From positions 62,001 through 126,000 of the IMG/VR virus record IMGVR_UViG_3300032242_003291: a stretch of DNA of 64,000 bases; one strand, written 5' to 3'. Position numbers and translations under genes: made by a program. Below are positions 56,445-64,000 of the stretch, piece after piece. Every line of letters begins with the position of its first letter. Positions within the stretch are counted from its first letter, which is position 1. The notes beneath the pieces are model-generated. The model had not been told where the DNA came from and ran no database searches. It saw only the letters and a program-made list of their open reading frames with translations.

Positions 56445-58457
56445 ATGAACGATTTAATGGACGACGACGACAAAATGAGTAAAAAACAAAAACAATCCTC
56501 TGACAGCAGTACACCTGTGTTGGATAACTTTAGTCGAGACCTAAACAAATTGGCCGCTGATGGCAAATTAGACCCTGTCATTGGGCGTGACAGAGAGATT
56601 TTGAGAATCGCTCAGATTCTATCTCGTAGAAAAAAGAATAACCCAATTATTATTGGTGAACCTGGTTGTGGTAAAACAGCACTTGTTGAAGGTTTGGCTA
56701 TCAAAATTGTAAATGGTGATTGTCCTCGCAACTTAGTTGATAAACGAATCGTTAACCTTGACTTAACTTCAGTGGTTGCTGGTACAAAGTACCGTGGTCA
56801 ATTTGAAGAAAGAATGAAGGTTATTATTGAAGAACTTCAAGCAAACCCAAATATCATCGTATTCATTGATGAAATACATACCTTGGTTGGCTCAGGTAAT
56901 TCAGCTGGTTCTATGGATGGTTCAAACATATTCAAACCCGCATTATCTCGCGGTGAACTTCAATGTATTGGTGCAACTACATTGGATGAATTCAGAAAAA
57001 ATATTGAAAAAGACGGAGCACTCGAACGTAGATTCCAAAAGGTAATGGTTGAGCCATCATCAGTGGAGGAAACAATTCAAATCTTGAAGAATGTTCGTGA
57101 CAAATACGAAACATTCCATAAGGTAACTTACACAGATGAAATCATCGAGACTTGTGTTAAATTGGCTGACCGTTATATCACGGACCGTGAGTTTCCTGAT
57201 AAAGCGTTTGATATCTTGGATGAAGTTGGAGCTCGTATGCAAACCGAACTTAAGATTCCTGAATCAATCGAATTATTGAAGAAAGCTGCCGCTGATATCA
57301 AACAACAAAAAACTGATGTTGTTAAGAAACAAAACTATGAGCAAGCCGCTCAATTAAGAGACAAGGAGAAAAAATTGTTGGCAAAGTTAGAATCTGAAAA
57401 CTCAAAGTTCGAAGAAGCTATGTTGAAAGACAAACAAAAAATTGCTCTTGATGATGTTTATGATGTTGTATCTAATATGACAAAAATCCCTGTGAACAAA
57501 ATGAGTGTAGATGATGCAAAAGCATTAATCAACTTAGATAAAGAATTGATTGGTAAAGTTATTGGTCAAGACTCAGCTGTCGTTAAGATTGCAAAATCAA
57601 TTAAGAGAAACAGATTGGGTATCAAAGACCCTAACCGTCCAATCGGTTCATTCATTTTCTTAGGCTCAACAGGTGTAGGTAAGACTCACTTGGCTAAACA
57701 ATTGGCTAAAGAGATGTTTGGTTCTGAAGATTCACTTATCCGTGTGGATATGTCTGAATACCAAGAGAAACATACTGTATCTAAATTGGTGGGAGCTCCT
57801 CCAGGTTATGTTGGATATGAAGAAGGTGGTCAATTAACTGAAAAGGTAAAGAACAAACCATACTCAGTAATCTTATTTGATGAGGTTGAAAAAGCTCACA
57901 AAGATGTGTTTACAGTATTACTTCAAATCTTGGATGATGGTCACGCAACAGATAGTTTAGGTAGAAAGATTAACTTCAAGAATACTTTAATCATCTTGAC
58001 GTCAAATTTAGGTGTGAAAAAATTACAAGACTTTGGCACAGGTATTGGTTTCTCTAATAACTCTTACGGAAACGAAGAGGCTAAGAAACAAGTACTGATG
58101 AAAGAAATGAAGAATTTCTTTTCACCTGAGTTCTTAAACCGTATTGATGACACTATTGTCTTCAACTCTTTGACTCCTGAGGATATCAAGAAAATCACTG
58201 AAATTGAATTGAAGAAGTTAACAGCTCGTTTGTCTGAGATGAAATACAACATCAGTTATGATGAGACATTAGTTGACTACTTAGCTAAGATTGGTTTCGA
58301 CGAATTATACGGAGCTAGACCACTTAAAAGAGCAATCCAAGACAAAGTTGAGGACTTGTTATCTGAAGAAGTTCTAACAGGTAAAATGATTGAAGGTAAG
58401 AATTACATTATCAAAGTGGATAATGAAGAAGTTAAGGTTACCAAGAAAGGTAGATAA
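56445..58457 (+). CDS. clpC: ClpC-type AAA+ unfoldase lacking the N-terminal Clp-repeat domain
   Basis: Two AAA modules (GEPGCGKT/FIDEIH and GSTGVGKT/LFDEVEK); pore loops KYRG and GYVG; UVR-type middle domain (QNYEQAAQLRDKE); IGF ClpP-docking loop. Confidence 0.88.
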   Translation: MNDLMDDDDKMSKKQKQSSDSSTPVLDNFSRDLNKLAADGKLDPVIGRDREILRIAQILSRRKKNNPIIIGEPGCGKTALVEGLAIKIVNGDCPRNLVDKRIVNLDLTSVVAGTKYRGQFEERMKVIIEELQANPNIIVFIDEIHTLVGSGNSAGSMDGSNIFKPALSRGELQCIGATTLDEFRKNIEKDGALERRFQKVMVEPSSVEETIQILKNVRDKYETFHKVTYTDEIIETCVKLADRYITDREFPDKAFDILDEVGARMQTELKIPESIELLKKAAADIKQQKTDVVKKQNYEQAAQLRDKEKKLLAKLESENSKFEEAMLKDKQKIALDDVYDVVSNMTKIPVNKMSVDDAKALINLDKELIGKVIGQDSAVVKIAKSIKRNRLGIKDPNRPIGSFIFLGSTGVGKTHLAKQLAKEMFGSEDSLIRVDMSEYQEKHTVSKLVGAPPGYVGYEEGGQLTEKVKNKPYSVILFDEVEKAHKDVFTVLLQILDDGHATDSLGRKINFKNTLIILTSNLGVKKLQDFGTGIGFSNNSYGNEEAKKQVLMKEMKNFFSPEFLNRIDDTIVFNSLTPEDIKKITEIELKKLTARLSEMKYNISYDETLVDYLAKIGFDELYGARPLKRAIQDKVEDLLSEEVLTGKMIEGKNYIIKVDNEEVKVTKKGR

Positions 58458-58463
58458 TTAATG

Positions 58464-58491
58464 AACCCTCACAGAAATGTGGGGGTTTTTT
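58464..58491 (+). terminator. Intrinsic terminator after clpC (identical copy at 63195)
   Basis: AACCCTCACA-GAAA-TGTGGGGGTT-TTTT. Confidence 0.85.
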
Positions 58492-58509
58492 ATATCAATA
58501 TAATGCATA

Positions 58510-58558: not shown

Positions 58559-59398
58559 TTAAAATAAGAATCTAGCAAACTCTTTTGGTTGTGATTCTTT
58601 GTAGTGAAGTTTGTATCCCAAACTTTCTATCATTTTTCTACCCATATCAATTCCGTTAAAAACATCCTCAACAACGACATATTCATTTTTTGTGTGGTAG
58701 TTATAATATCCGATTGAAAAATTGATACAAGAAAAATTAAATTTAGTTCTTAAAGCATAAACATCAGTGTATGGATGTACCATATATTGCATGTCCTCAT
58801 TATTCATTCCTTCAGTTAATATTTGGTCCACCTTTTCAAAAAACTCTGAATTTCTGTCGAATAGAACTTGACCAAAACATTTTTCAGTAATCATCCAGTT
58901 TTCAGGTGCATCAAATTGAATTCCATATCCAACATTATTGAAGAATTCTTCTTTAGCTTTCTTTGAACCGTGACATCCTGTTTCCTCAGAAACAAAAAAT
59001 GCGGCCTTAAGATAAGGTAATTCTTTCAAAAGGGTTAAACACGCAAATACTCCACACTTATCATCACCACCAATCCCTGTTGGATTTCCTAAGTCGTTAT
59101 ACGCTTTATATGATAGTTTTAATTCACCTTGTGTATTAGGTAATTGTTCTTCTTGGATGTTGATTGTATCAATATCATGAACTGTGTCCGTATGCGCAAT
59201 TACGCAAGGGAAATAGAAATCAGGAGGAATCAATACAGACTCTTGTTTTGTTGCATACACATTTTTGTATTCATCAACAAAAAATTCAATATTATTTTCT
59301 TTAAGCCATTGAACTAAGTAGACGACCATAAGGTCTTCTTTATAAGTTTTGGTTGGGACACTTAAAACGTCCTTTAATAGTTGTAAATTTTTTTCCAT
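58559..59398 (-). CDS. M28/M20-clan zinc peptidase
   Basis: IAHTDTV, GIGGDDKCG, FVSEETGCHGS, QFDAP, GYYNYHTKNE. Confidence 0.85.
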   Translation of the reverse strand: MEKNLQLLKDVLSVPTKTYKEDLMVVYLVQWLKENNIEFFVDEYKNVYATKQESVLIPPDFYFPCVIAHTDTVHDIDTINIQEEQLPNTQGELKLSYKAYNDLGNPTGIGGDDKCGVFACLTLLKELPYLKAAFFVSEETGCHGSKKAKEEFFNNVGYGIQFDAPENWMITEKCFGQVLFDRNSEFFEKVDQILTEGMNNEDMQYMVHPYTDVYALRTKFNFSCINFSIGYYNYHTKNEYVVVEDVFNGIDMGRKMIESLGYKLHYKESQPKEFARFLF

Positions 59399-59402
59399 AC
59401 CA

Positions 59403-59434
59403 CAAAGGTAGGTAAATTATTCGTCATCTCCAAA
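59403..59434 (-). promoter_or_regulatory. Bacteroidota housekeeping-sigma promoter (-33/-7)
   Basis: TTTG-N20-TACCTTTG on the minus strand, ending 4 nt before the peptidase ATG. Confidence 0.72.
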
Positions 59435-61231
59435 TAAATCAAACAATTCAGGTTGATATAACAATTTTAAAAATGCTTCTTCGGATAGTGAAAAATCTTT
59501 GGACCCTTTAAAACTAGAAGTAATTCTAACATTTACTTTCATTTTGTCTCTGTCAAACCCTAAAACTTTAAATTTTATATTTTTGTCTTTTGGTAATTCA
59601 TACCAAGTATTAATTTTATATTTAGATTCTATCCTTTTCCTAAATTCAATGAAATTTTTCAATTCACCTTCTTCATTTTCAATTTTGTCAATAATTTTGT
59701 CAAAATATGATTCCGCGGTTCTATTAAATGATACGGAATCAAAATTGTCAGAATCTTGGAATTCATAAGAATTTTCTGCCCATCCTCCTATATCTTTACC
59801 ATGTTGTTCGATTATTTGATTAAATAAAGATATTACATCTGTTTTATGTATATCTAATCTTGTGGACCACATCAACAAATTAGCAACAGTTGTAGAAATA
59901 TAATCATATTTTCTATGGATTTTAAATCCAACAGATTCGAGTAAATTATTCAAATCTTTGTCAATTTGTACTCTTGCTGTTGCATTCATTTCATTTTCTT
60001 TTTCCGAATGATAATCACCAATAATCCAATCCATTTCATTTTCAAATGTGTCCAATAATGCTTCTGCAAGTTGTTGTCTATAACCCTCGTCATCCAACTT
60101 ATACTCTATGTTAGGTAAAAGTGCGGATGCAATTTCTTTTAATTTTTCTTTATTTTCATCATTTAATTCATAAAAAATAATATATCCGTTTTTGAAATCA
60201 TCTTCGATGGTATATCTATCCATAAATTCATACCCACTATAGTGACTTTCAATTGCATTTAAAAACCAAATATCATCCTCATGTAAATCTAATGAATTAA
60301 AAAATTTATCGTCGTTGTCAAAGTCAATTATTATAATACTTTGACCTAAGGGTTCTCTTTCATCTACCGCGTATATTCCATCATCAGAATTTGCTAAACC
60401 TGTGGAAGAAACCTTTTTTCTAATGAACCCTCTCAACGACTTTGAAAAATCACTTACTCCGAGTAATTCATCTATCAAATCTATTTGTTGTGGAAATTCT
60501 TTTCTCAATTCATCAGGACCAACTAATACATCCGATGAGTTATAAACTTCTTTTCTTTTTTCTTCCGTATCTACGAACAACGCGAGTTTATTTCCGTCAT
60601 TTTTATTAATGAAATAATATAATTCCCCTTTTTCTGCATATTGTCTAAAATAATGAGATGTCTGTTTGTTTGTAGTGCACCATTTAGTATTTGCACCATA
60701 ATAACAAGAGGCGGCATATGTCTTTGGCATAACAACCAAAACATTTTCATCTTCATACAATTTTTCAGCTTGAGATTTCAATTCTCTCTCAAGTTCTTTA
60801 TTTGTTTTTCTACTATCAACAACTTCCATCAATTCTTCTAAAAAGGCTGGGTTTGTATATTGGTTGATATCTTTTGGATTGTCAGCAAGATTATTGATAT
60901 TATCGAATACTCCATGTCTTGCTCTATACTTTGTTTCAGTTTTCCAAATGTCATCTGAAGTTATCTTATCAACATTTTGGTGAAACCAAGGAATAATCGT
61001 ATAAAAAACATCAGAAACTGCTGTTCTTTGGTCTAAATTCAATCCACCTTCAGGACCACTTAATTGAGGTATGATTTTATTTAATTGATTGGCAAGATAA
61101 TCCACATACTTGTACCTTGTTGGGTCAATATTCAGTACTTGGTCAATAAAATTAGTGTCGTATTTAAACTTTTGTTTAAGTTTTTTAGCAACTTCCTCTT
61201 TTTTCCCTTCTATTAGTATCTTTTTGGACAT
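59417..61231 (-). CDS. Large protein with PcfJ-like domain
   Basis: KLYEDENVLVV.PKTY.ASCYYGANTKWCTT...YF..Y...GELYYFI; TATTTAT-N5-ATG. Confidence 0.6.
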   Translation of the reverse strand: MSKKILIEGKKEEVAKKLKQKFKYDTNFIDQVLNIDPTRYKYVDYLANQLNKIIPQLSGPEGGLNLDQRTAVSDVFYTIIPWFHQNVDKITSDDIWKTETKYRARHGVFDNINNLADNPKDINQYTNPAFLEELMEVVDSRKTNKELERELKSQAEKLYEDENVLVVMPKTYAASCYYGANTKWCTTNKQTSHYFRQYAEKGELYYFINKNDGNKLALFVDTEEKRKEVYNSSDVLVGPDELRKEFPQQIDLIDELLGVSDFSKSLRGFIRKKVSSTGLANSDDGIYAVDEREPLGQSIIIIDFDNDDKFFNSLDLHEDDIWFLNAIESHYSGYEFMDRYTIEDDFKNGYIIFYELNDENKEKLKEIASALLPNIEYKLDDEGYRQQLAEALLDTFENEMDWIIGDYHSEKENEMNATARVQIDKDLNNLLESVGFKIHRKYDYISTTVANLLMWSTRLDIHKTDVISLFNQIIEQHGKDIGGWAENSYEFQDSDNFDSVSFNRTAESYFDKIIDKIENEEGELKNFIEFRKRIESKYKINTWYELPKDKNIKFKVLGFDRDKMKVNVRITSSFKGSKDFSLSEEAFLKLLYQPELFDLFGDDE

Positions 61232-61252: not shown

Positions 61253-61283
61253 TTTGGAATTTCAATATTTATCATTATCTTTG
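61253..61283 (+). promoter_or_regulatory. Bacteroidota-type promoter with embedded TATTTAT motif, driving tmRNA
   Basis: TTTG(61253)-N19-TATCTTTG(61276). The core AATATTTATCATTATCTTTGT recurs at about 62334-62354. Confidence 0.75.
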
Positions 61284-61303: not shown

Positions 61304-61700
61304 GGGGATGCAAGGTATTGACGGCCATTCGTATGGTAAATGGGCACGTAGTCAGAATTCATCTATGACTTAAATCCACGGTGAAAAAACTCAAATGGCA
61401 ATACTTTTGCTAAAATGGCTACTTTAGGTTTAACTAGAGAAGCTGTTGTTGTTGCTGCTTAATAGTAGAGAACAACGTTCGGGTCGGTTAGGACATATAA
61501 CCTAGGAACAGAAGTCCGTAATACGGGTCACAGGTCAGAGCTCGTTTAAAATAATTCTGAGACCAGGTAATTTGTGAGTTTGGTTCCCACATATATCAAA
61601 CTTAATATTTCGTAACATTGAGAAACAATGTTGTACTAAACGTGTAGTCCATTTATGGTTCAGTGGTTCGGACGCGGCTTCGATGCCGCCATCTCCACCA
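61304..61700 (+). ncRNA. ssrA: tmRNA (397 nt)
   Basis: 5' GGGGATG pairs with 3' CATCTCC-A-CCA, including the G3:U alanine identity pair; T-arm GCGGC/GCCGC; internal ORF ending ...GCT GCT TAA TAG TAG. Confidence 0.93.
61397..61462 (+). other. tmRNA tag reading frame, (A)GNTFAKMATLGLTREAVVVAA*
   Basis: In-frame translation ending in AA and triple stop. The resume codon GGC is inferred from position after the A-rich AAACTCAAAT segment. Confidence 0.7.
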
Positions 61701-61705
61701 TATAT

Positions 61706-61734
61706 AAAAAAGGTTCCTATTTGGAACCTTTTTT
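61706..61734. terminator. Bidirectional terminator between tmRNA and the HNH gene
   Basis: AAAAAAGGTTCC-TATTT-GGAACCTTTTTT; contains the HNH TAG stop. Confidence 0.85.
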
Positions 61735-62262
61735 ATTTTCAATAATTAATTCTATCAATTCATTAACCATATCATCAGACATATCATTTTTCATCCAATT
61801 AATGGCTCTTGACACCCATCTAATATTTCCTTTAATATAACCTTTAGAACTATCTATTCTATCCAAAGATGCTGTATAAATTGGGTTTTTGTTAATCTTA
61901 CTATAAGTTGATAGTATAAGATTTACTCCACTAAATTCGCAAATACCGTTTTGTTTTTCCCATTTTTCTTTCAAATCATCAATTGTTATATCAATAACTT
62001 GATTTCTGGTTTTAATATTCCTAAAATGATATTTGAATTTAGTATATTCATCACCTTTTCGTTTATACCCAAATTTTGATATATCAATTCTTTTATCTCC
62101 AAAATTTTTAATATTGTGTTTCCCGACACAAGTTCTAGTACAAAAATTAGGTCTATTTAATTTTTCATTTCTTCTTATTTCTGTTAAAGGTTTTTCAAAT
62201 TCAATACCGCAGTTTTTACAAACACATTTACCCATTTTGTATTTTTTTGTTTTGATTCCCAT
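61717..62262 (-). CDS. HNH-like free-standing endonuclease with N-terminal Zn finger
   Basis: CKNC...FCTRTC; CEFSG; ASLDRIDSSKGYIKGNIRWVS..IN.MK; TATTTAT-N4-ATG. Confidence 0.75.
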   Translation of the reverse strand: MGIKTKKYKMGKCVCKNCGIEFEKPLTEIRRNEKLNRPNFCTRTCVGKHNIKNFGDKRIDISKFGYKRKGDEYTKFKYHFRNIKTRNQVIDITIDDLKEKWEKQNGICEFSGVNLILSTYSKINKNPIYTASLDRIDSSKGYIKGNIRWVSRAINWMKNDMSDDMVNELIELIIENKKGSK

Positions 62263-62321: not shown

Positions 62322-62353
62322 TTTGGTTAATTTAATATTTATCATTATCTTTG
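62322..62353 (+). promoter_or_regulatory. Bacteroidota-type promoter with embedded TATTTAT
   Basis: TTTG(62322)-N20-TATCTTTG(62346). Confidence 0.75.
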
Positions 62354-62367
62354 TTTAAATTCTTAAT

Positions 62368-62529
62368 ATGAAAAAACTATTATTTTTTTTATTGATTGCT
62401 ATGACTTTCAGTAGTTGTATGTATTATCCTTATGGATATTCATATCGTCCTCATTATGGTGGTATATACCGTGGTGGATATCATGGTGGTGGTTCATTCC
62501 GTGGATACGGAGGATATAGAAGACATTAG
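62368..62529 (+). CDS. Small Gly/Tyr/Arg-rich lipoprotein (53 aa; below the ORF-track cutoff)
   Basis: MKKLLFFLLIAMTFSS-C-MYYPYGYSYRPHYGGIYRGGYHGGGSFRGYGGYRRH; SPII-type signal with Cys17. Confidence 0.72.
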   Translation: MKKLLFFLLIAMTFSSCMYYPYGYSYRPHYGGIYRGGYHGGGSFRGYGGYRRH

Positions 62530-62635
62530 GACACTCAACCTAAACCATTGATTTTAACAATCAATTAACTATTTATAAGAGTATGTAAAATAATTTTTCA
62601 TATTTTATATGCAATAAAATTCTAAACAAAAAAAC

Positions 62636-63172
62636 ATGAAAAAACAATTTAAATTCATTTTAGGAGCTTTGGCATTAATGTTCATTTCGCTTACCTCAAA
62701 TGCACAATTTAAAAAAACAGAAAAGTTCTTAGAAGGAACAGTTTCTTATTCAAAAGCTACAGGTGCTGTAAGACAGTACAGTATTAACCCTTCATTCGGT
62801 TATTTCTTAACTAATCGTTTTGCAGTAGGTGTTAATGGTGGAATTGGTGAAGATGCTTCAACAAAGAAAACAGTATTAGGTGCTTTCGGAAGATGTTACA
62901 TAATGAACATTGGAGATAAATTAAACATTTTCTCTCAATTAAGTGTTTCAAGTAACAAAGCAGAAATTGGTAAAACTAAAACAACAACAACTAACTCAAA
63001 TTTAGGTATTGGTGCAAATTATTTCGTATCTAAGAAAATAGCACTTACTACAACGTTAGCTGGTTTAGTTGATTATAGTGAAGTTCATTCCAAATCTACA
63101 TTCTCAGTAGGATTCAACGGAATTAACAACCCATTAACTACAGCTCAATTTGGTGTTTTATACAAATTTTAA
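62636..63172 (+). CDS. Outer-membrane beta-barrel protein (8-strand, Bacteroidota-type)
   Basis: Signal peptide ending SNA-Q; alternating amphipathic strands (FGYFLTNRFAVG, GANYFVSKKIAL); terminal GVLYKF BAM signal. Confidence 0.8.
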   Translation: MKKQFKFILGALALMFISLTSNAQFKKTEKFLEGTVSYSKATGAVRQYSINPSFGYFLTNRFAVGVNGGIGEDASTKKTVLGAFGRCYIMNIGDKLNIFSQLSVSSNKAEIGKTKTTTTNSNLGIGANYFVSKKIALTTTLAGLVDYSEVHSKSTFSVGFNGINNPLTTAQFGVLYKF

Positions 63173-63194
63173 TTAAAAAAAATAATACACAAAC

Positions 63195-63223
63195 AACCCT
63201 CACAGAAATGTGGGGGTTTTTTA
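63195..63223 (+). terminator. Intrinsic terminator after the OMP gene
   Basis: Identical 29-mer to the one at 58464. Confidence 0.85.
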
Positions 63224-63251
63224 TGTAATAAACTTTTACTATATTTGTATC

Positions 63252-63602
63252 ATGAATAGAATTTTAATAGGGTTATTTATTTTTGTAGCCTACACAATAT
63301 CTCAAATTTTTACGTTTTATCAATTACAGGGACACCTGTGGAATAAGTGGATTAAAGAACATCCACTTTTAATGACCATATTTGGACTCCCAATCGGTTA
63401 TGTGGTTATATTAGCCAGTAGACAAATGGTCGAACTGTGGGGAGGACAAACGTGGCCAAACAGGATTATAGGATTTTGTCTTGGGGTCATAGTTTTTAGT
63501 TTTATGTCTTGGTTTATGTTGAAAGAACCAATTACCGTTAAAACATCAGTTTGTCTCTTATTAAGTTTTGTTATTCTTGGGATTCAATTGTTTTGGAAAT
63601 AA
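63252..63602 (+). CDS. Small 4-TM membrane protein, SMR/DMT-like
   Basis: Start reassigned to MNRILIG (63252), 4 nt after TATATTTG; four hydrophobic helices; L.KEPIT.K...C..L motif. Confidence 0.6.
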   Translation: MNRILIGLFIFVAYTISQIFTFYQLQGHLWNKWIKEHPLLMTIFGLPIGYVVILASRQMVELWGGQTWPNRIIGFCLGVIVFSFMSWFMLKEPITVKTSVCLLLSFVILGIQLFWK

Positions 63603-63617
63603 AAGGTATTTATGAAT

Positions 63618-64000
63618 ATGAAATTCATGGGTATCTTATTAAAGGAGGGTCGTAGAGAAGATTTAAAGAAAAAATATTCAACAAAGTTTAATGAAGAAGA
63701 CTTAGACTTTATTTTGAATATTTCCGATTTGAAAGATTTCAATCACAAGTACACCGATTTTGTATTAAAAAATACAGATGGTGATGGTGAATTGGATACT
63801 AATGAATTAGAACATCTGATAGGTCTCATAAAAGATTTTGACAAGTATCAATCTCAACTCCCTAAAAAAGATATCAATCAATATGTATCCATGAATGAAC
63901 TTGAAAAAGTAATTCTATATATTAGGGGAAAAAACAAAGATAAAGAATTAGAAAAACAAGTAGACAAAATTTATGAAGATGATAAGTTTCTTGTTGTAAA
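63618..64000 (+). CDS. N-terminal part of a paralogue of the PcfJ-like protein (runs off the right edge)
   Basis: MKFMGILLKEGRREDLKKKY...KDINQY...KELEKQVDKIYEDDKFLVV parallels 59417..61231 (KDINQY...RELKSQAEKLYEDENVLVV). Confidence 0.72.
   Translation, partial: MKFMGILLKEGRREDLKKKYSTKFNEEDLDFILNISDLKDFNHKYTDFVLKNTDGDGELDTNELEHLIGLIKDFDKYQSQLPKKDINQYVSMNELEKVILYIRGKNKDKELEKQVDKIYEDDKFLVV

What the first reader, a model, noticed from the sequence alone, without database searches (positions are those of the whole stretch)
62322..63602. Host-envelope remodelling cassette: Gly/Tyr/Arg-rich lipoprotein + beta-barrel OMP + SMR-like inner-membrane protein
Three consecutive genes target three envelope locations, with host-type promoters. 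The 53-aa lipoprotein, missed by the ORF track, has a low-complexity YGG/RGG mature part of only ~37 aa. By analogy to lambda Lom/Bor and T5 Llp/Cor this could be superinfection exclusion or receptor masking. An alternative is a small-molecule conduit across both membranes.
Basis: partly seen in the sequence, partly recalled or inferred. Interest (0 to 1): 0.6.

Follow-up and report, generated by a model that had tools for sequence, protein, structure and literature searches.

The report
Phage outer-membrane gene pair plus transporter-like gene
A 317-kb freshwater jumbo phage carries a swappable gene pair (a tiny lipoprotein and a small outer-membrane barrel with trimmed loops) next to a separate, conserved SMR-like membrane gene; they are real envelope genes of a recently described kind, not one three-gene machine.

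Summary
Three real genes lie at 62368-63602: a 53-aa lipoprotein, a 178-aa beta-barrel and a 116-aa four-helix membrane protein. All are under purifying selection (dN/dS 0.02-0.27). They are not one cassette. The lipoprotein and the barrel form an accessory pair known only from this phage and a few near relatives. The pair runs from a copy of the phage tmRNA promoter, or directly behind the tmRNA, and ends at a strong terminator. The 116-aa gene sits behind that terminator with its own -7 box. It is a core gene of a large clade of about 320-kb phages (63 IMG/VR loci) and also occurs with no barrel gene nearby. Its fold is SMR-like (Gdx-Clo Z 9.2), but it has no conserved acidic residue in helix 1 and no Pfam SMR match. 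The barrel belongs to a phage-borne subfamily. Its nearest named relatives are 210-aa outer-membrane proteins of Flavobacterium and Chitinophagaceae (about 30% identity), and it lacks residues at four alternate strand connections. In 35 of 58 related loci the same slot holds a 700-aa or larger gene; all six sampled are TonB-dependent receptors. Beta-barrels in huge phages were described in October 2026. A Lom-like surface role is the most likely function, but it is untested.

The parts
61253..61283 (+). Bacteroidota-type promoter-like site (TTTG ... TATCTTTG) in front of the tmRNA; the template of the copy at 62322
   Evidence: repeat found
61304..61700 (+). Phage tmRNA. In relatives L008 and L084 the lipoprotein start codon follows its CCA end by about 15 nt.
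   Evidence: Rfam RF00023, 80.6 bits, E 1e-30; also found in L008, L083 and L087
61717..62262 (-). HNH homing-endonuclease gene inserted between the tmRNA and the lipoprotein gene. It is absent in L008 and L084; L083 has a different HNH gene at the same place.
   Evidence: phrog_3322 E 8.5e-22
62322..62353 (+). Promoter-like site of the lipoprotein-barrel unit, a copy of the tmRNA promoter; its -7 box ends 14 nt before the ATG
62368..62529 (+). Mini-lipoprotein, 53 aa; lipobox FSSC with Cys17; 36-aa Gly/Tyr/Arg/His-rich mature peptide
62530..62635 (+). Conserved A-rich spacer with no recognisable promoter or terminator; the pair is probably co-transcribed
62636..63172 (+). 178-aa outer-membrane beta-barrel: signal peptide 1-23, OmpX/OmpA-TM-like fold, C-terminal Phe
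63195..63224 (+). Intrinsic terminator (10-bp stem plus T-run) ending the pair; an identical 30-bp copy lies after the ClpB-like gene at 58464-58493
63240..63247 (+). -7 box TATATTTG, 4 nt before the ATG of the 116-aa gene, implying a leaderless or near-leaderless transcript
   Evidence: conserved in relatives
63252..63602 (+). 116-aa four-helix SMR/DMT-fold membrane protein, a core gene of the phage clade

Best explanation
There are two independent units, not one cassette. Unit 1 (62322-63224) is an accessory, moron-like operon made of a 36-residue lipopeptide anchor and a small 8-stranded outer-membrane barrel. It is transcribed by the host polymerase from a tmRNA-type promoter, or in relatives as a read-through of the tmRNA gene. 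Inferred: the host Sec, Lol and BAM machineries export the two proteins to the outer membrane of the infected Flavobacterium-like cell. The barrel descends from a family of about 210-aa Bacteroidota outer-membrane proteins. It has lost about 30 residues at the N-terminus and at four alternate strand connections, which are the presumed surface loops. What remains is an OmpX/Lom-like barrel with tight turns. The most likely role (inferred, untested) is to alter the surface of the infected cell. It could interfere with a receptor so that sister or rival phages do not adsorb, as lambda Lom and other small barrels do. Less specifically, it could keep the outer membrane intact during a long jumbo-phage infection. 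Unit 2 (63240-63602) is a separately transcribed core gene for a phage-specific SMR/DMT-fold inner-membrane protein. It has no conserved acidic residue in helix 1, so it is not a classical proton-coupled SMR pump. It happens to border a hypervariable slot that takes up outer-membrane genes.
For: - **Real genes:** dN/dS is 0.02-0.27 for all three.
- **The pair travels together:** all 4 database homologues of the lipoprotein, plus L008, sit directly upstream of the 178-aa barrel gene.
- **Promoter logic:** L008 and L084 have no endonuclease, and there the ATG follows the tmRNA CCA end by about 15 nt. The window and L083 each have a different HNH gene inserted, and each has a promoter copy.
- **Unit boundary:** the terminator plus own -7 box in front of the 116-aa gene is conserved.
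- **Barrel fold:** AF2 pLDDT is 78.9. The top Foldseek hits are NspA, OprF-N, OmpA-TM, Ail, OmpW and OmpX, with E 1e-5 to 1e-3.
- **Barrel relatives:** homologues of 50-93% identity lie on phage-like contigs at unrelated positions. The nearest named bacterial relatives are Flavobacterium sp. 7E (29% identity) and Chitinophagaceae (31%).
- **Trimmed connections:** against 23 relatives of about 210 aa, the missing residues fall only after residues 24, 44, 73, 113 and 149, that is at every second strand connection.
- **The slot:** a 700-aa or larger gene lies just upstream on the same strand in 35 of 58 related loci. All six sampled are TonB-dependent receptors. This genome has no TonB-dependent receptor.
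- **116-aa protein:** AF2 pLDDT is 85.9. Gdx-Clo is the top hit in two independent fold searches (TM 0.55-0.74; Z 9.2, the only Z of 8 or more). Clusters are viral only. The homologue in Flavobacterium phage immuto is gp219.
- **Precedents:** small barrels, including Lom, block phage adsorption (bioRxiv 10.1101/2025.02.28.640651). 1,603 beta-barrel proteins have been reported in huge phages, with the same hypothesis (bioRxiv 10.64898/2026.10.24.761521).
Against: - No functional or localisation data exist, and no RNA run holds this sequence.
- The barrel fails Pfam's cut-off (22.3 against 28.7 bits) and has no sequence relation to Ail/Lom.
- DSSP gives nine beta segments, so the last strand is poorly modelled.
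- A barrel with almost no loops offers little surface with which to mask a receptor.
- Nothing shows that the lipopeptide binds the barrel; the complex test gave no answer.
- The host and its receptor are unknown.
- The fold match of a four-helix bundle at Z 9 is below the level that excludes a common arrangement (note).
- Co-transcription of the pair is inferred only from the lack of signals in the spacer.
Confidence: 0.4

Rival explanations
1. Trans-envelope uptake route. The outer-membrane protein in the slot (here the small barrel, in relatives a TonB-dependent receptor) and the conserved SMR-like inner-membrane protein work together to move a small molecule across both membranes.
For: The SMR-like gene always borders the slot. 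In 35 of 58 related loci a 700-aa or larger gene lies directly upstream on the same strand, and all six sampled are TonB-dependent receptors. DoxX-like and PspC-like membrane genes also occur there.
Against: A terminator and a separate promoter lie between the two. 22 of 58 loci, and Flavobacterium phage immuto, have the SMR-like gene with no outer-membrane gene beside it. The barrel family occurs elsewhere without the SMR-like gene. 8-stranded barrels of this fold have no open pore. There is no conserved acidic residue in helix 1 and no Pfam SMR match at E up to 10.
Confidence: 0.1
2. Envelope maintenance. The barrel and the lipopeptide are structural outer-membrane fillers or stabilisers (an OmpA/OmpX-type housekeeping role) that keep the envelope intact while host gene expression is shut down during a long jumbo-phage cycle. 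They have no role in exclusion.
For: The host-derived family is kept under strong purifying selection. The unit is linked to a tmRNA and a ClpB-like chaperone neighbourhood, which suggests host-maintenance genes. Relatives carry nutrient receptors in the same slot. The genome encodes many other exported proteins.
Against: The barrel has no periplasmic OmpA-like peptidoglycan-binding domain. The pair is confined to a few near relatives, so it is dispensable for the clade.
Confidence: 0.2
3. Lysis genes. The mini-lipoprotein is an o-spanin-like outer-membrane lipoprotein and the 116-aa four-helix protein is a holin or antiholin.
For: The size and lipobox resemble o-spanins (own knowledge of lambda Rz1). 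An M23 peptidase gene lies about 4-5 kb downstream in relatives and in this genome's syntenic block.
Against: There is no i-spanin partner next to the lipoprotein; a barrel gene follows instead. The lipoprotein is absent from most of the clade. The 116-aa protein is far more conserved than holins usually are (65-93% identity, dN/dS 0.02-0.045), and its best fold match is SMR. The promoters are of the host type and linked to the tmRNA, which does not suggest late lysis timing.
Confidence: 0.07
4. Chance ORFs or decaying remnants with no function.
For: The lipoprotein ORF is short and of low complexity. The barrel is below Pfam's cut-off.
Against: dN/dS is well below 1 for all three, indels in the lipoprotein are in frame, and the Cys is invariant. 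Both AF2 models are confident.
Confidence: 0.02

Closest known systems
Beta-barrel outer-membrane proteins of huge phages (Yuan & Chen, bioRxiv 10.64898/2026.10.24.761521)
   Same: An 8-stranded barrel encoded by a phage of over 200 kb from fresh water with a Bacteroidota-type host, related to host proteins. TonB-dependent receptors also occur in such phages. The same receptor-interference hypothesis is proposed.
   Different: That survey found envelope genes to be rare next to 8-stranded barrels. Here the barrel has a dedicated mini-lipoprotein partner, is tied to the tmRNA transcription unit, sits in a slot that holds TonB-dependent receptors in relatives, and has lost residues at four alternate strand connections compared with its bacterial relatives.
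Lambda Lom (Ail/Lom family) and other small barrels that block adsorption
   Same: A phage-encoded 8-stranded barrel of about 170-200 aa with an OmpX/Ail-like fold. Lom gives strong defence against lambda vir and is reported to bind LamB (as cited there).
   Different: There is no sequence relation and no Pfam Ail_Lom hit. The gene is carried by a jumbo phage, with no evidence of lysogeny looked for here. Receptor and effect are unknown.
T5 Llp, phi80/N15 Cor and lambda Bor (small phage lipoproteins)
   Same: A small phage-encoded lipoprotein with a lipobox. Llp and Cor inactivate the phage's own outer-membrane receptor (own knowledge).
   Different: No sequence similarity was found in Pfam, PHROGs or NCBIfam. 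The mature part is only 36 aa, of low complexity and probably disordered. It is always paired with a barrel gene.
SMR family (EmrE, Gdx) within the DMT superfamily
   Same: About 110 aa with four helices. Gdx-Clo and EmrE are the best fold matches. 12 of 26 family members give faint EamA hits. The homologue in phage immuto is annotated 'EmrE and related'.
   Different: There is no Pfam PF00893 match at E up to 10 and no PDB sequence hit. No acidic residue is conserved in helix 1. An invariant Gln18 lies roughly where the coupling Glu would be, but this is inferred from the alignment offset, not shown. The family is viral only, with no relatives in 185,579 species' genomes by motif scan.
'Outer membrane beta-barrel protein' of Flavobacterium and Chitinophagaceae (e.g. 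WP_173856431.1, 210 aa)
   Same: Full-length homology at 29-31% identity, with the same strand order and C-terminal signal.
   Different: The phage form is about 30 residues shorter, with the deletions confined to the N-terminus and four alternate strand connections.

Membership tests
Small 8-stranded outer-membrane beta-barrels (OmpA-TM/OmpX type; Pfam PF13505 OMP_b-brl) | Cleavable Sec signal peptide | tested here: met
   The sequence reads MKKQFK, then a hydrophobic core, then SNA|QF, and this is conserved across 26 homologues. This is a judgement by eye; no SignalP run was available.
Small 8-stranded outer-membrane beta-barrels (OmpA-TM/OmpX type; Pfam PF13505 OMP_b-brl) | Antiparallel beta-barrel fold | tested here: met
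   AF2 pLDDT is 78.9. Foldseek finds 19 PDB hits at E of 1e-3 or better, led by the 8-stranded NspA, OprF-N, OmpA, Ail, OmpW and OmpX. DSSP gives nine segments because the last strand is broken. The indel pattern fits four loops and three turns.
Small 8-stranded outer-membrane beta-barrels (OmpA-TM/OmpX type; Pfam PF13505 OMP_b-brl) | C-terminal beta-signal ending in an aromatic residue | tested here: met
   The protein ends ...FGVLYKF, and the terminal F or L is conserved in the family.
Small 8-stranded outer-membrane beta-barrels (OmpA-TM/OmpX type; Pfam PF13505 OMP_b-brl) | Score above Pfam's gathering threshold | tested here: inconclusive
   The score is 22.3 bits against a cut-off of 28.7 and 20.4 bits. 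Many homologues carry a precomputed PF13505 hit.
Small 8-stranded outer-membrane beta-barrels (OmpA-TM/OmpX type; Pfam PF13505 OMP_b-brl) | Location in the outer membrane | not testable with these tools
   This needs cell fractionation or surface labelling.
Ail/Lom family (lambda Lom) | Sequence membership (Pfam Ail_Lom) | tested here: not met
   There is no hit in Pfam at E up to 1. Only the fold class is shared.
Ail/Lom family (lambda Lom) | Blocks adsorption or binds the phage receptor | not testable with these tools
   Host and receptor are unknown.
Bacterial lipoproteins (signal peptidase II substrates) | Lipobox with an invariant Cys after a hydrophobic signal | tested here: met
   F-S-S-C17 (F-T-S-C in one sequence) is present and the Cys is invariant in 6 of 6 sequences. 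Pfam LPAM_1 is weak, at E 0.12.
T5 Llp / Cor / Bor exclusion lipoproteins | Sequence relation to those families | tested here: not met
   There are no Pfam, PHROG or NCBIfam hits. Only 4 homologues exist, all from near relatives.
SMR transporters (Pfam PF00893) | About 100-120 aa with four transmembrane helices | tested here: met
   Helices are at 3-30, 38-62, 68-89 and 96-114.
SMR transporters (Pfam PF00893) | SMR fold | tested here: met
   Gdx-Clo is the top hit in Foldseek (probability 0.99, TM 0.55-0.74, but E 0.3-1.1) and in the exhaustive VIA search (Z 9.2, 102 of 103 residues aligned). The helical-bundle caveat applies.
SMR transporters (Pfam PF00893) | Conserved membrane-embedded Glu in helix 1 (EmrE Glu14) | tested here: not met
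   No Asp or Glu is conserved in helix 1 in the 26 aligned members. The invariant polar residues there are Tyr14, Gln18, Gln24, Gln26 and His28.
SMR transporters (Pfam PF00893) | Sequence match to the family model | tested here: not met
   There is no match at E up to 10 in the genome, no Pfam hit, and only faint EamA hits (best E 0.076) in 12 of 26 members.

The most novel reading that the evidence does not exclude
The stretch between the phage tmRNA and the conserved SMR-like gene is a modular locus for reprogramming the outer membrane. Through it, a whole clade of about 320-kb Bacteroidota phages swaps surface proteins: TonB-dependent receptors, receptor plus lipoprotein pairs, or, as here, a minimal barrel plus a Tyr/Gly/Arg lipopeptide. 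In this reading the lipopeptide and the loop-trimmed barrel form a new two-component system that is switched on early together with the tmRNA. It disables or replaces a host receptor, giving superinfection exclusion in a lytic jumbo phage. The SMR-like protein without the glutamate would be the inner-membrane partner or regulator of that locus.
Probability: 0.12. Interest if true: 0.65.

Novelty: new variant of a known kind. Interest (0 to 1): 0.4.

Why it matters
Outer-membrane proteins encoded by phages have only just been recognised as common in huge phages, and none from an environmental Bacteroidota phage has a known role. This locus offers a compact test case. It has a barrel trimmed at four alternate strand connections, with a dedicated 36-residue lipopeptide. 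It has a clear evolutionary source in host proteins. It sits in a slot where relatives carry TonB-dependent receptors. Its transcription is tied to a phage tmRNA. If the pair blocks adsorption, Lom-type exclusion would extend to lytic jumbo phages of Flavobacterium-like hosts. If it does not, the locus is an ordinary accessory gene pair. The SMR-fold core protein without a coupling glutamate is found in 63 IMG/VR loci, in Flavobacterium phage immuto and in megaphages of about 640 kb. It is labelled 'multidrug transporter' in databases, and that label is probably wrong.

Tried and rejected
- **Complex test:** Complex prediction on the mature lipopeptide plus the mature barrel scored 0.00 and gave no answer. 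It is evidence neither for nor against binding.
- **ARAGORN:** it found no tmRNA. Rfam then found one at 80.6 bits, so the ARAGORN blank was a false negative.
- **GTDB genomes:** motif scans for the 116-aa family found nothing, with a single sequence and with a profile. I read this as support for a phage-specific family, but the method depends on the motifs chosen.
- **INPHARED phages:** tblastn of the barrel gave no match. DNA search of the region matched only the HNH gene.
- **PDB sequence searches:** profiles of both families gave nothing meaningful.
- **Family libraries:** PHROGs and NCBIfam gave nothing for the three proteins.
- **Promoter scans:** sigma-70-type sites are at chance level (19 found, 18.1 expected). 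The Bacteroidota motif is not enriched over the whole window.
- **Expression:** no RNA run holds the locus.
- **ESM Atlas for the lipoprotein:** only leads scoring below 0.9 ('lipoprotein family protein').
- **First reading corrected:** I first took the contexts of the 116-aa homologues (TonB-dependent receptor, PspC, M23 peptidase) for bacterial chromosomes. Synteny with this phage genome showed that they are related phages.
- **Not done:** the residue of the 116-aa protein that corresponds to EmrE Glu14. No referenced SMR sequence or model coordinates were available, so the Gln18 assignment stays an inference.
- **Cost note:** the big protein search was used once, because the claim about bacterial relatives of the barrel depended on it.
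Full report
**Source of the window.** The window is bases 62001-126000 of a 317,259-bp IMG/VR virus record that CheckV rates 100% complete. It is a jumbo phage. Runs that hold parts of the locus are freshwater, lake and wastewater metagenomes. None is an RNA run.

**The observation.** The three ORFs exist as described.
- The 53-aa product has a basic N-terminus, a hydrophobic core and the lipobox FSSC. Its 36-aa mature part contains 11 Gly, 10 Tyr, 5 Arg and 3 His, with pI 9.8.
- The 178-aa product has a signal peptide ending SNA|QF and ends in ...GVLYKF. It gives a sub-threshold Pfam OMP_b-brl match (E 1.7e-4).
- The third product is best read from the ATG at 63252 (116 aa). The longer GTG frame begins inside a terminator hairpin.

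Against the relatives L008, L083 and L084, dN/dS is 0.10-0.27 for the lipoprotein, 0.05-0.12 for the barrel and 0.02-0.045 for the 116-aa protein. All three are therefore maintained coding genes.

**Signals between the genes.**
- A Bacteroidota-type TTTG-N-TAnnTTTG site lies at 62322-62353, 14 nt before the lipoprotein ATG. The motif is not enriched in the window as a whole (6 found, 5.1 expected).
- This site is a near-copy of the one at 61253-61283, which precedes a tmRNA gene.
- The tmRNA lies at 61304-61700 (Rfam, 80.6 bits, E 1e-30).
- The 106-nt spacer between the lipoprotein and barrel genes is highly conserved. It has no recognisable promoter or terminator.
- After the barrel gene comes the only terminator-like site in the 3 kb scanned: a 10-bp stem plus T-run at 63195-63224.
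- Then comes TATATTTG at 63240-63247, 4 nt before the ATG of the 116-aa gene.

**How relatives are built.**
- In L008 and L084 the lipoprotein ATG follows the CCA end of the tmRNA by about 15 nt, with no promoter of its own.
- In the window and in L083, two different HNH endonuclease genes are inserted on the opposite strand between the tmRNA and the lipoprotein gene. In both cases a copy of the tmRNA-type promoter precedes the lipoprotein gene.
- I infer that the lipoprotein-barrel pair is normally expressed with the tmRNA, and that its expression was kept when a homing endonuclease split the unit.

**The pair is accessory.** The lipoprotein has only four database homologues of 75-98% identity. 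Each of them, and the L008 copy, lies directly upstream of a 178-aa barrel gene. Among 67 loci that carry the 116-aa gene, only the nearest relative, L008, has the barrel and the lipoprotein.

**The barrel family.**
- The barrel has 27 homologues of 41-93% identity.
- Every context I read is phage-like and different from the others:
  - next to a secreted nuclease (L004);
  - between a metallophosphatase and a clamp-loader-like ATPase (L005);
  - next to a GroEL-like gene (L085);
  - between SmpB, a GOLLD RNA and another tmRNA (L087);
  - on a 587-kb megaphage-like contig with IF3 and a Clp protease (L090).
- None of these has a small lipoprotein beside the barrel gene.
- A profile search of 1.84 billion proteins gave 20 clusters at E of 1e-30 or better, with lengths mostly 167-189 aa. 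A long tail of 2,125 further relatives is mostly about 200-220 aa long.
- Named members of the tail are 'outer membrane beta-barrel protein' of Flavobacterium sp. 7E and PL002, of Ginsengibacter, Hanamia and Flavisolibacter, and a Sphingobacterium protein. Identity to the window protein is 29-31% over the full length.

**Barrel structure and trimmed connections.**
- The AF2 model (pLDDT 78.9) matches 8-stranded barrels best: NspA, OprF-N, OmpA-TM, Ail, OmpW and OmpX.
- I aligned the phage form with 23 relatives of about 210 aa. It lacks on average 5.9, 5.2, 11.0, 5.7 and 7 residues after positions 24, 44, 73, 113 and 149.
- Those positions are the mature N-terminus and the connections between strands 1-2, 3-4, 5-6 and 7-8. 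Nothing is missing at the 2-3, 4-5 or 6-7 turns.
- In an OmpA-like topology the affected connections are the four surface loops. That assignment is an inference.
- DSSP reports nine strand segments because the last strand is interrupted in a low-confidence stretch, so the strand count is not fully settled.

**The 116-aa protein.**
- It has at least 190 homologues of 65-93% identity and 63 loci in IMG/VR, on contigs of up to 321 kb.
- I first took its neighbours (TonB-dependent receptor, PspC, DUF2061, M23 peptidase) for bacterial genes. They are syntenic with this phage genome downstream of the gene, so these contigs are related phages.
- Two motif scans of 185,579 species' genomes found no relative. 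ESM Atlas clusters are viral only.
- More distant homologues occur in Flavobacterium phage vB_FspM_immuto (gp219, 48% identity, annotated 'multidrug transporter EmrE and related'). They also occur in uncultured phages of 636-642 kb.
- AF2 gives four helices (pLDDT 85.9).
- Gdx-Clo and EmrE are the top Foldseek rows (TM 0.55-0.74, weak E-values). Gdx-Clo is the single best of 48,161 chains in the exhaustive search (Z 9.2), followed by DMT-superfamily members such as SLC35B1.
- The family has no conserved acidic residue in helix 1, no Pfam SMR match at E up to 10 and only faint EamA hits.
- It is SMR-like in fold. It is not a demonstrable SMR family member, and it is probably not a proton-coupled pump.

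**The slot.**
- The stretch between the conserved block (ClpB-like ATPase, M20 peptidase, a 346- or 604-aa gene, tmRNA) and the terminator in front of the 116-aa gene is hypervariable.
- In 35 of 58 loci with enough upstream sequence (22 of 40 distinct architectures), it holds a gene of 700 aa or more on the same strand.
- All six that I scanned are TonB-dependent receptors, with CarboxypepD_reg, Plug and beta-barrel domains. Some are followed by a lipoprotein of about 400 aa.
- DoxX-like, PspC-like and other exported proteins also occur there.
- This genome has no TonB-dependent receptor anywhere and only this one small barrel.
- The arrangement of terminator plus own -7 box directly before the 116-aa ATG is present in 25 of 40 distinct upstream sequences. 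Exact TAnnTTTG is present in 14, and several more have near variants.
- So the 116-aa gene marks the right-hand border of the slot and is transcribed on its own.

[quoted passage not shown] 8-stranded barrels are the commonest class, and TonB-dependent receptors are also present. Phage proteins are usually closest to homologues from the predicted hosts, and some are highly transcribed. The authors propose receptor interference, citing work in which lambda Lom binds LamB. A functional-metagenomics study showed that small barrels, including Lom, block phage adsorption or infection. The kind is therefore known. The new features here are:
- the dedicated mini-lipoprotein;
- the coupling to the tmRNA;
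- the trimming at four alternate strand connections relative to bacterial relatives;
- the shared slot with TonB-dependent receptors.

**Mechanism and verdict.**
- Shown: gene anatomy, selection, fold classes, distribution and the unit boundary.
- Inferred: export through the host Sec, Lol and BAM pathways; early transcription by the host polymerase; co-transcription of the pair; the surface position of the trimmed connections.
- Guessed by analogy: a role in receptor interference or superinfection exclusion. Envelope maintenance is the main rival. A two-membrane conduit and lysis roles are minor rivals.
- A complex prediction for the lipopeptide and the barrel gave no answer.

Noticed in passing
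window 61304-61700 (+): A phage-encoded tmRNA (Rfam, 80.6 bits) that ARAGORN missed. The likely tag frame starts at 61397 and reads GNTFAKMATLGLTREAVVVAA followed by a stop (21 aa, ending in Ala-Ala). Homologous tmRNAs occur in L008, L083 and L087, and L087 also encodes SmpB.
   Followed up: partly
window 61717-62262 (-); L083 4190-4777 (-); L069 1661-2209 (-): HNH homing-endonuclease genes inserted just after the tmRNA. L008 and L084 have none, and L083 has an unrelated one at the same place. In the window and in L083 the insertion comes with a copy of the tmRNA-type promoter in front of the next gene. A hairpin at about 61706-61734, seen by eye, could end both the tmRNA and the convergent HNH gene.
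   Followed up: partly
window 58464-58493 and 63195-63224: An identical 30-bp terminator hairpin plus T-run occurs after the ClpB-like gene and after the barrel gene. Variants of the same AACCCTCA...TGGGGGTTTTTT hairpin precede the 116-aa gene in most relatives. Gene callers often read it as an 'MGVFY...' N-terminal extension, giving 130-aa calls.
   Followed up: partly
L012, L013, L016, L019, L022, L027, L043, L069 (slot upstream of the 116-aa gene): Related phages of about 320 kb encode full TonB-dependent receptors of 725-1110 aa (CarboxypepD_reg, Plug and barrel domains) in the same slot. Some have a lipoprotein of about 400 aa, a DoxX-like protein or a PspC-like protein alongside. L043 also has another small putative barrel (148 aa, no Pfam hit).
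   Followed up: partly
window 59417-61231 (-), 63612-63998 (+, runs off the window); genome 159827-160867 and 250642-252402: A paralogous family of large proteins (604, 499, 346 and 586 aa) of unknown function with similar N-terminal regions (phrog_17056 and phrog_28193). Two copies flank the locus. The 499-aa copy is syntenic with the 116-aa gene across the clade.
   Followed up: no
window 56445-58457 (+), 58559-59398 (-): A ClpB/ClpA-like double AAA+ ATPase (phrog_4871, E 2e-242) and an M20-family peptidase lie just upstream. Together with the tmRNA they form a protein-quality-control neighbourhood.
   Followed up: no
L087 6261-6662 (+): A GOLLD RNA (Rfam, 306 bits) lies directly downstream of a 51%-identical barrel homologue in another phage. 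Four tRNAs, SmpB and a tmRNA are also in this 10.5-kb locus.
   Followed up: no
L082 (Flavobacterium phage immuto, NC_055915.1 29194-29532): The immuto homologue of the 116-aa protein lies a few genes from the 7-deazaguanine DNA-modification genes (QueD, QueE, FolE, DpdA). This may be chance. No such link was looked for in this genome.
   Followed up: no
genome 139057-139728, 165651-168272, 190768-191433 and others: The phage encodes many further predicted exported proteins and lipoproteins. One is a secreted non-specific nuclease whose homologue lies beside the barrel gene in L004.
   Followed up: no
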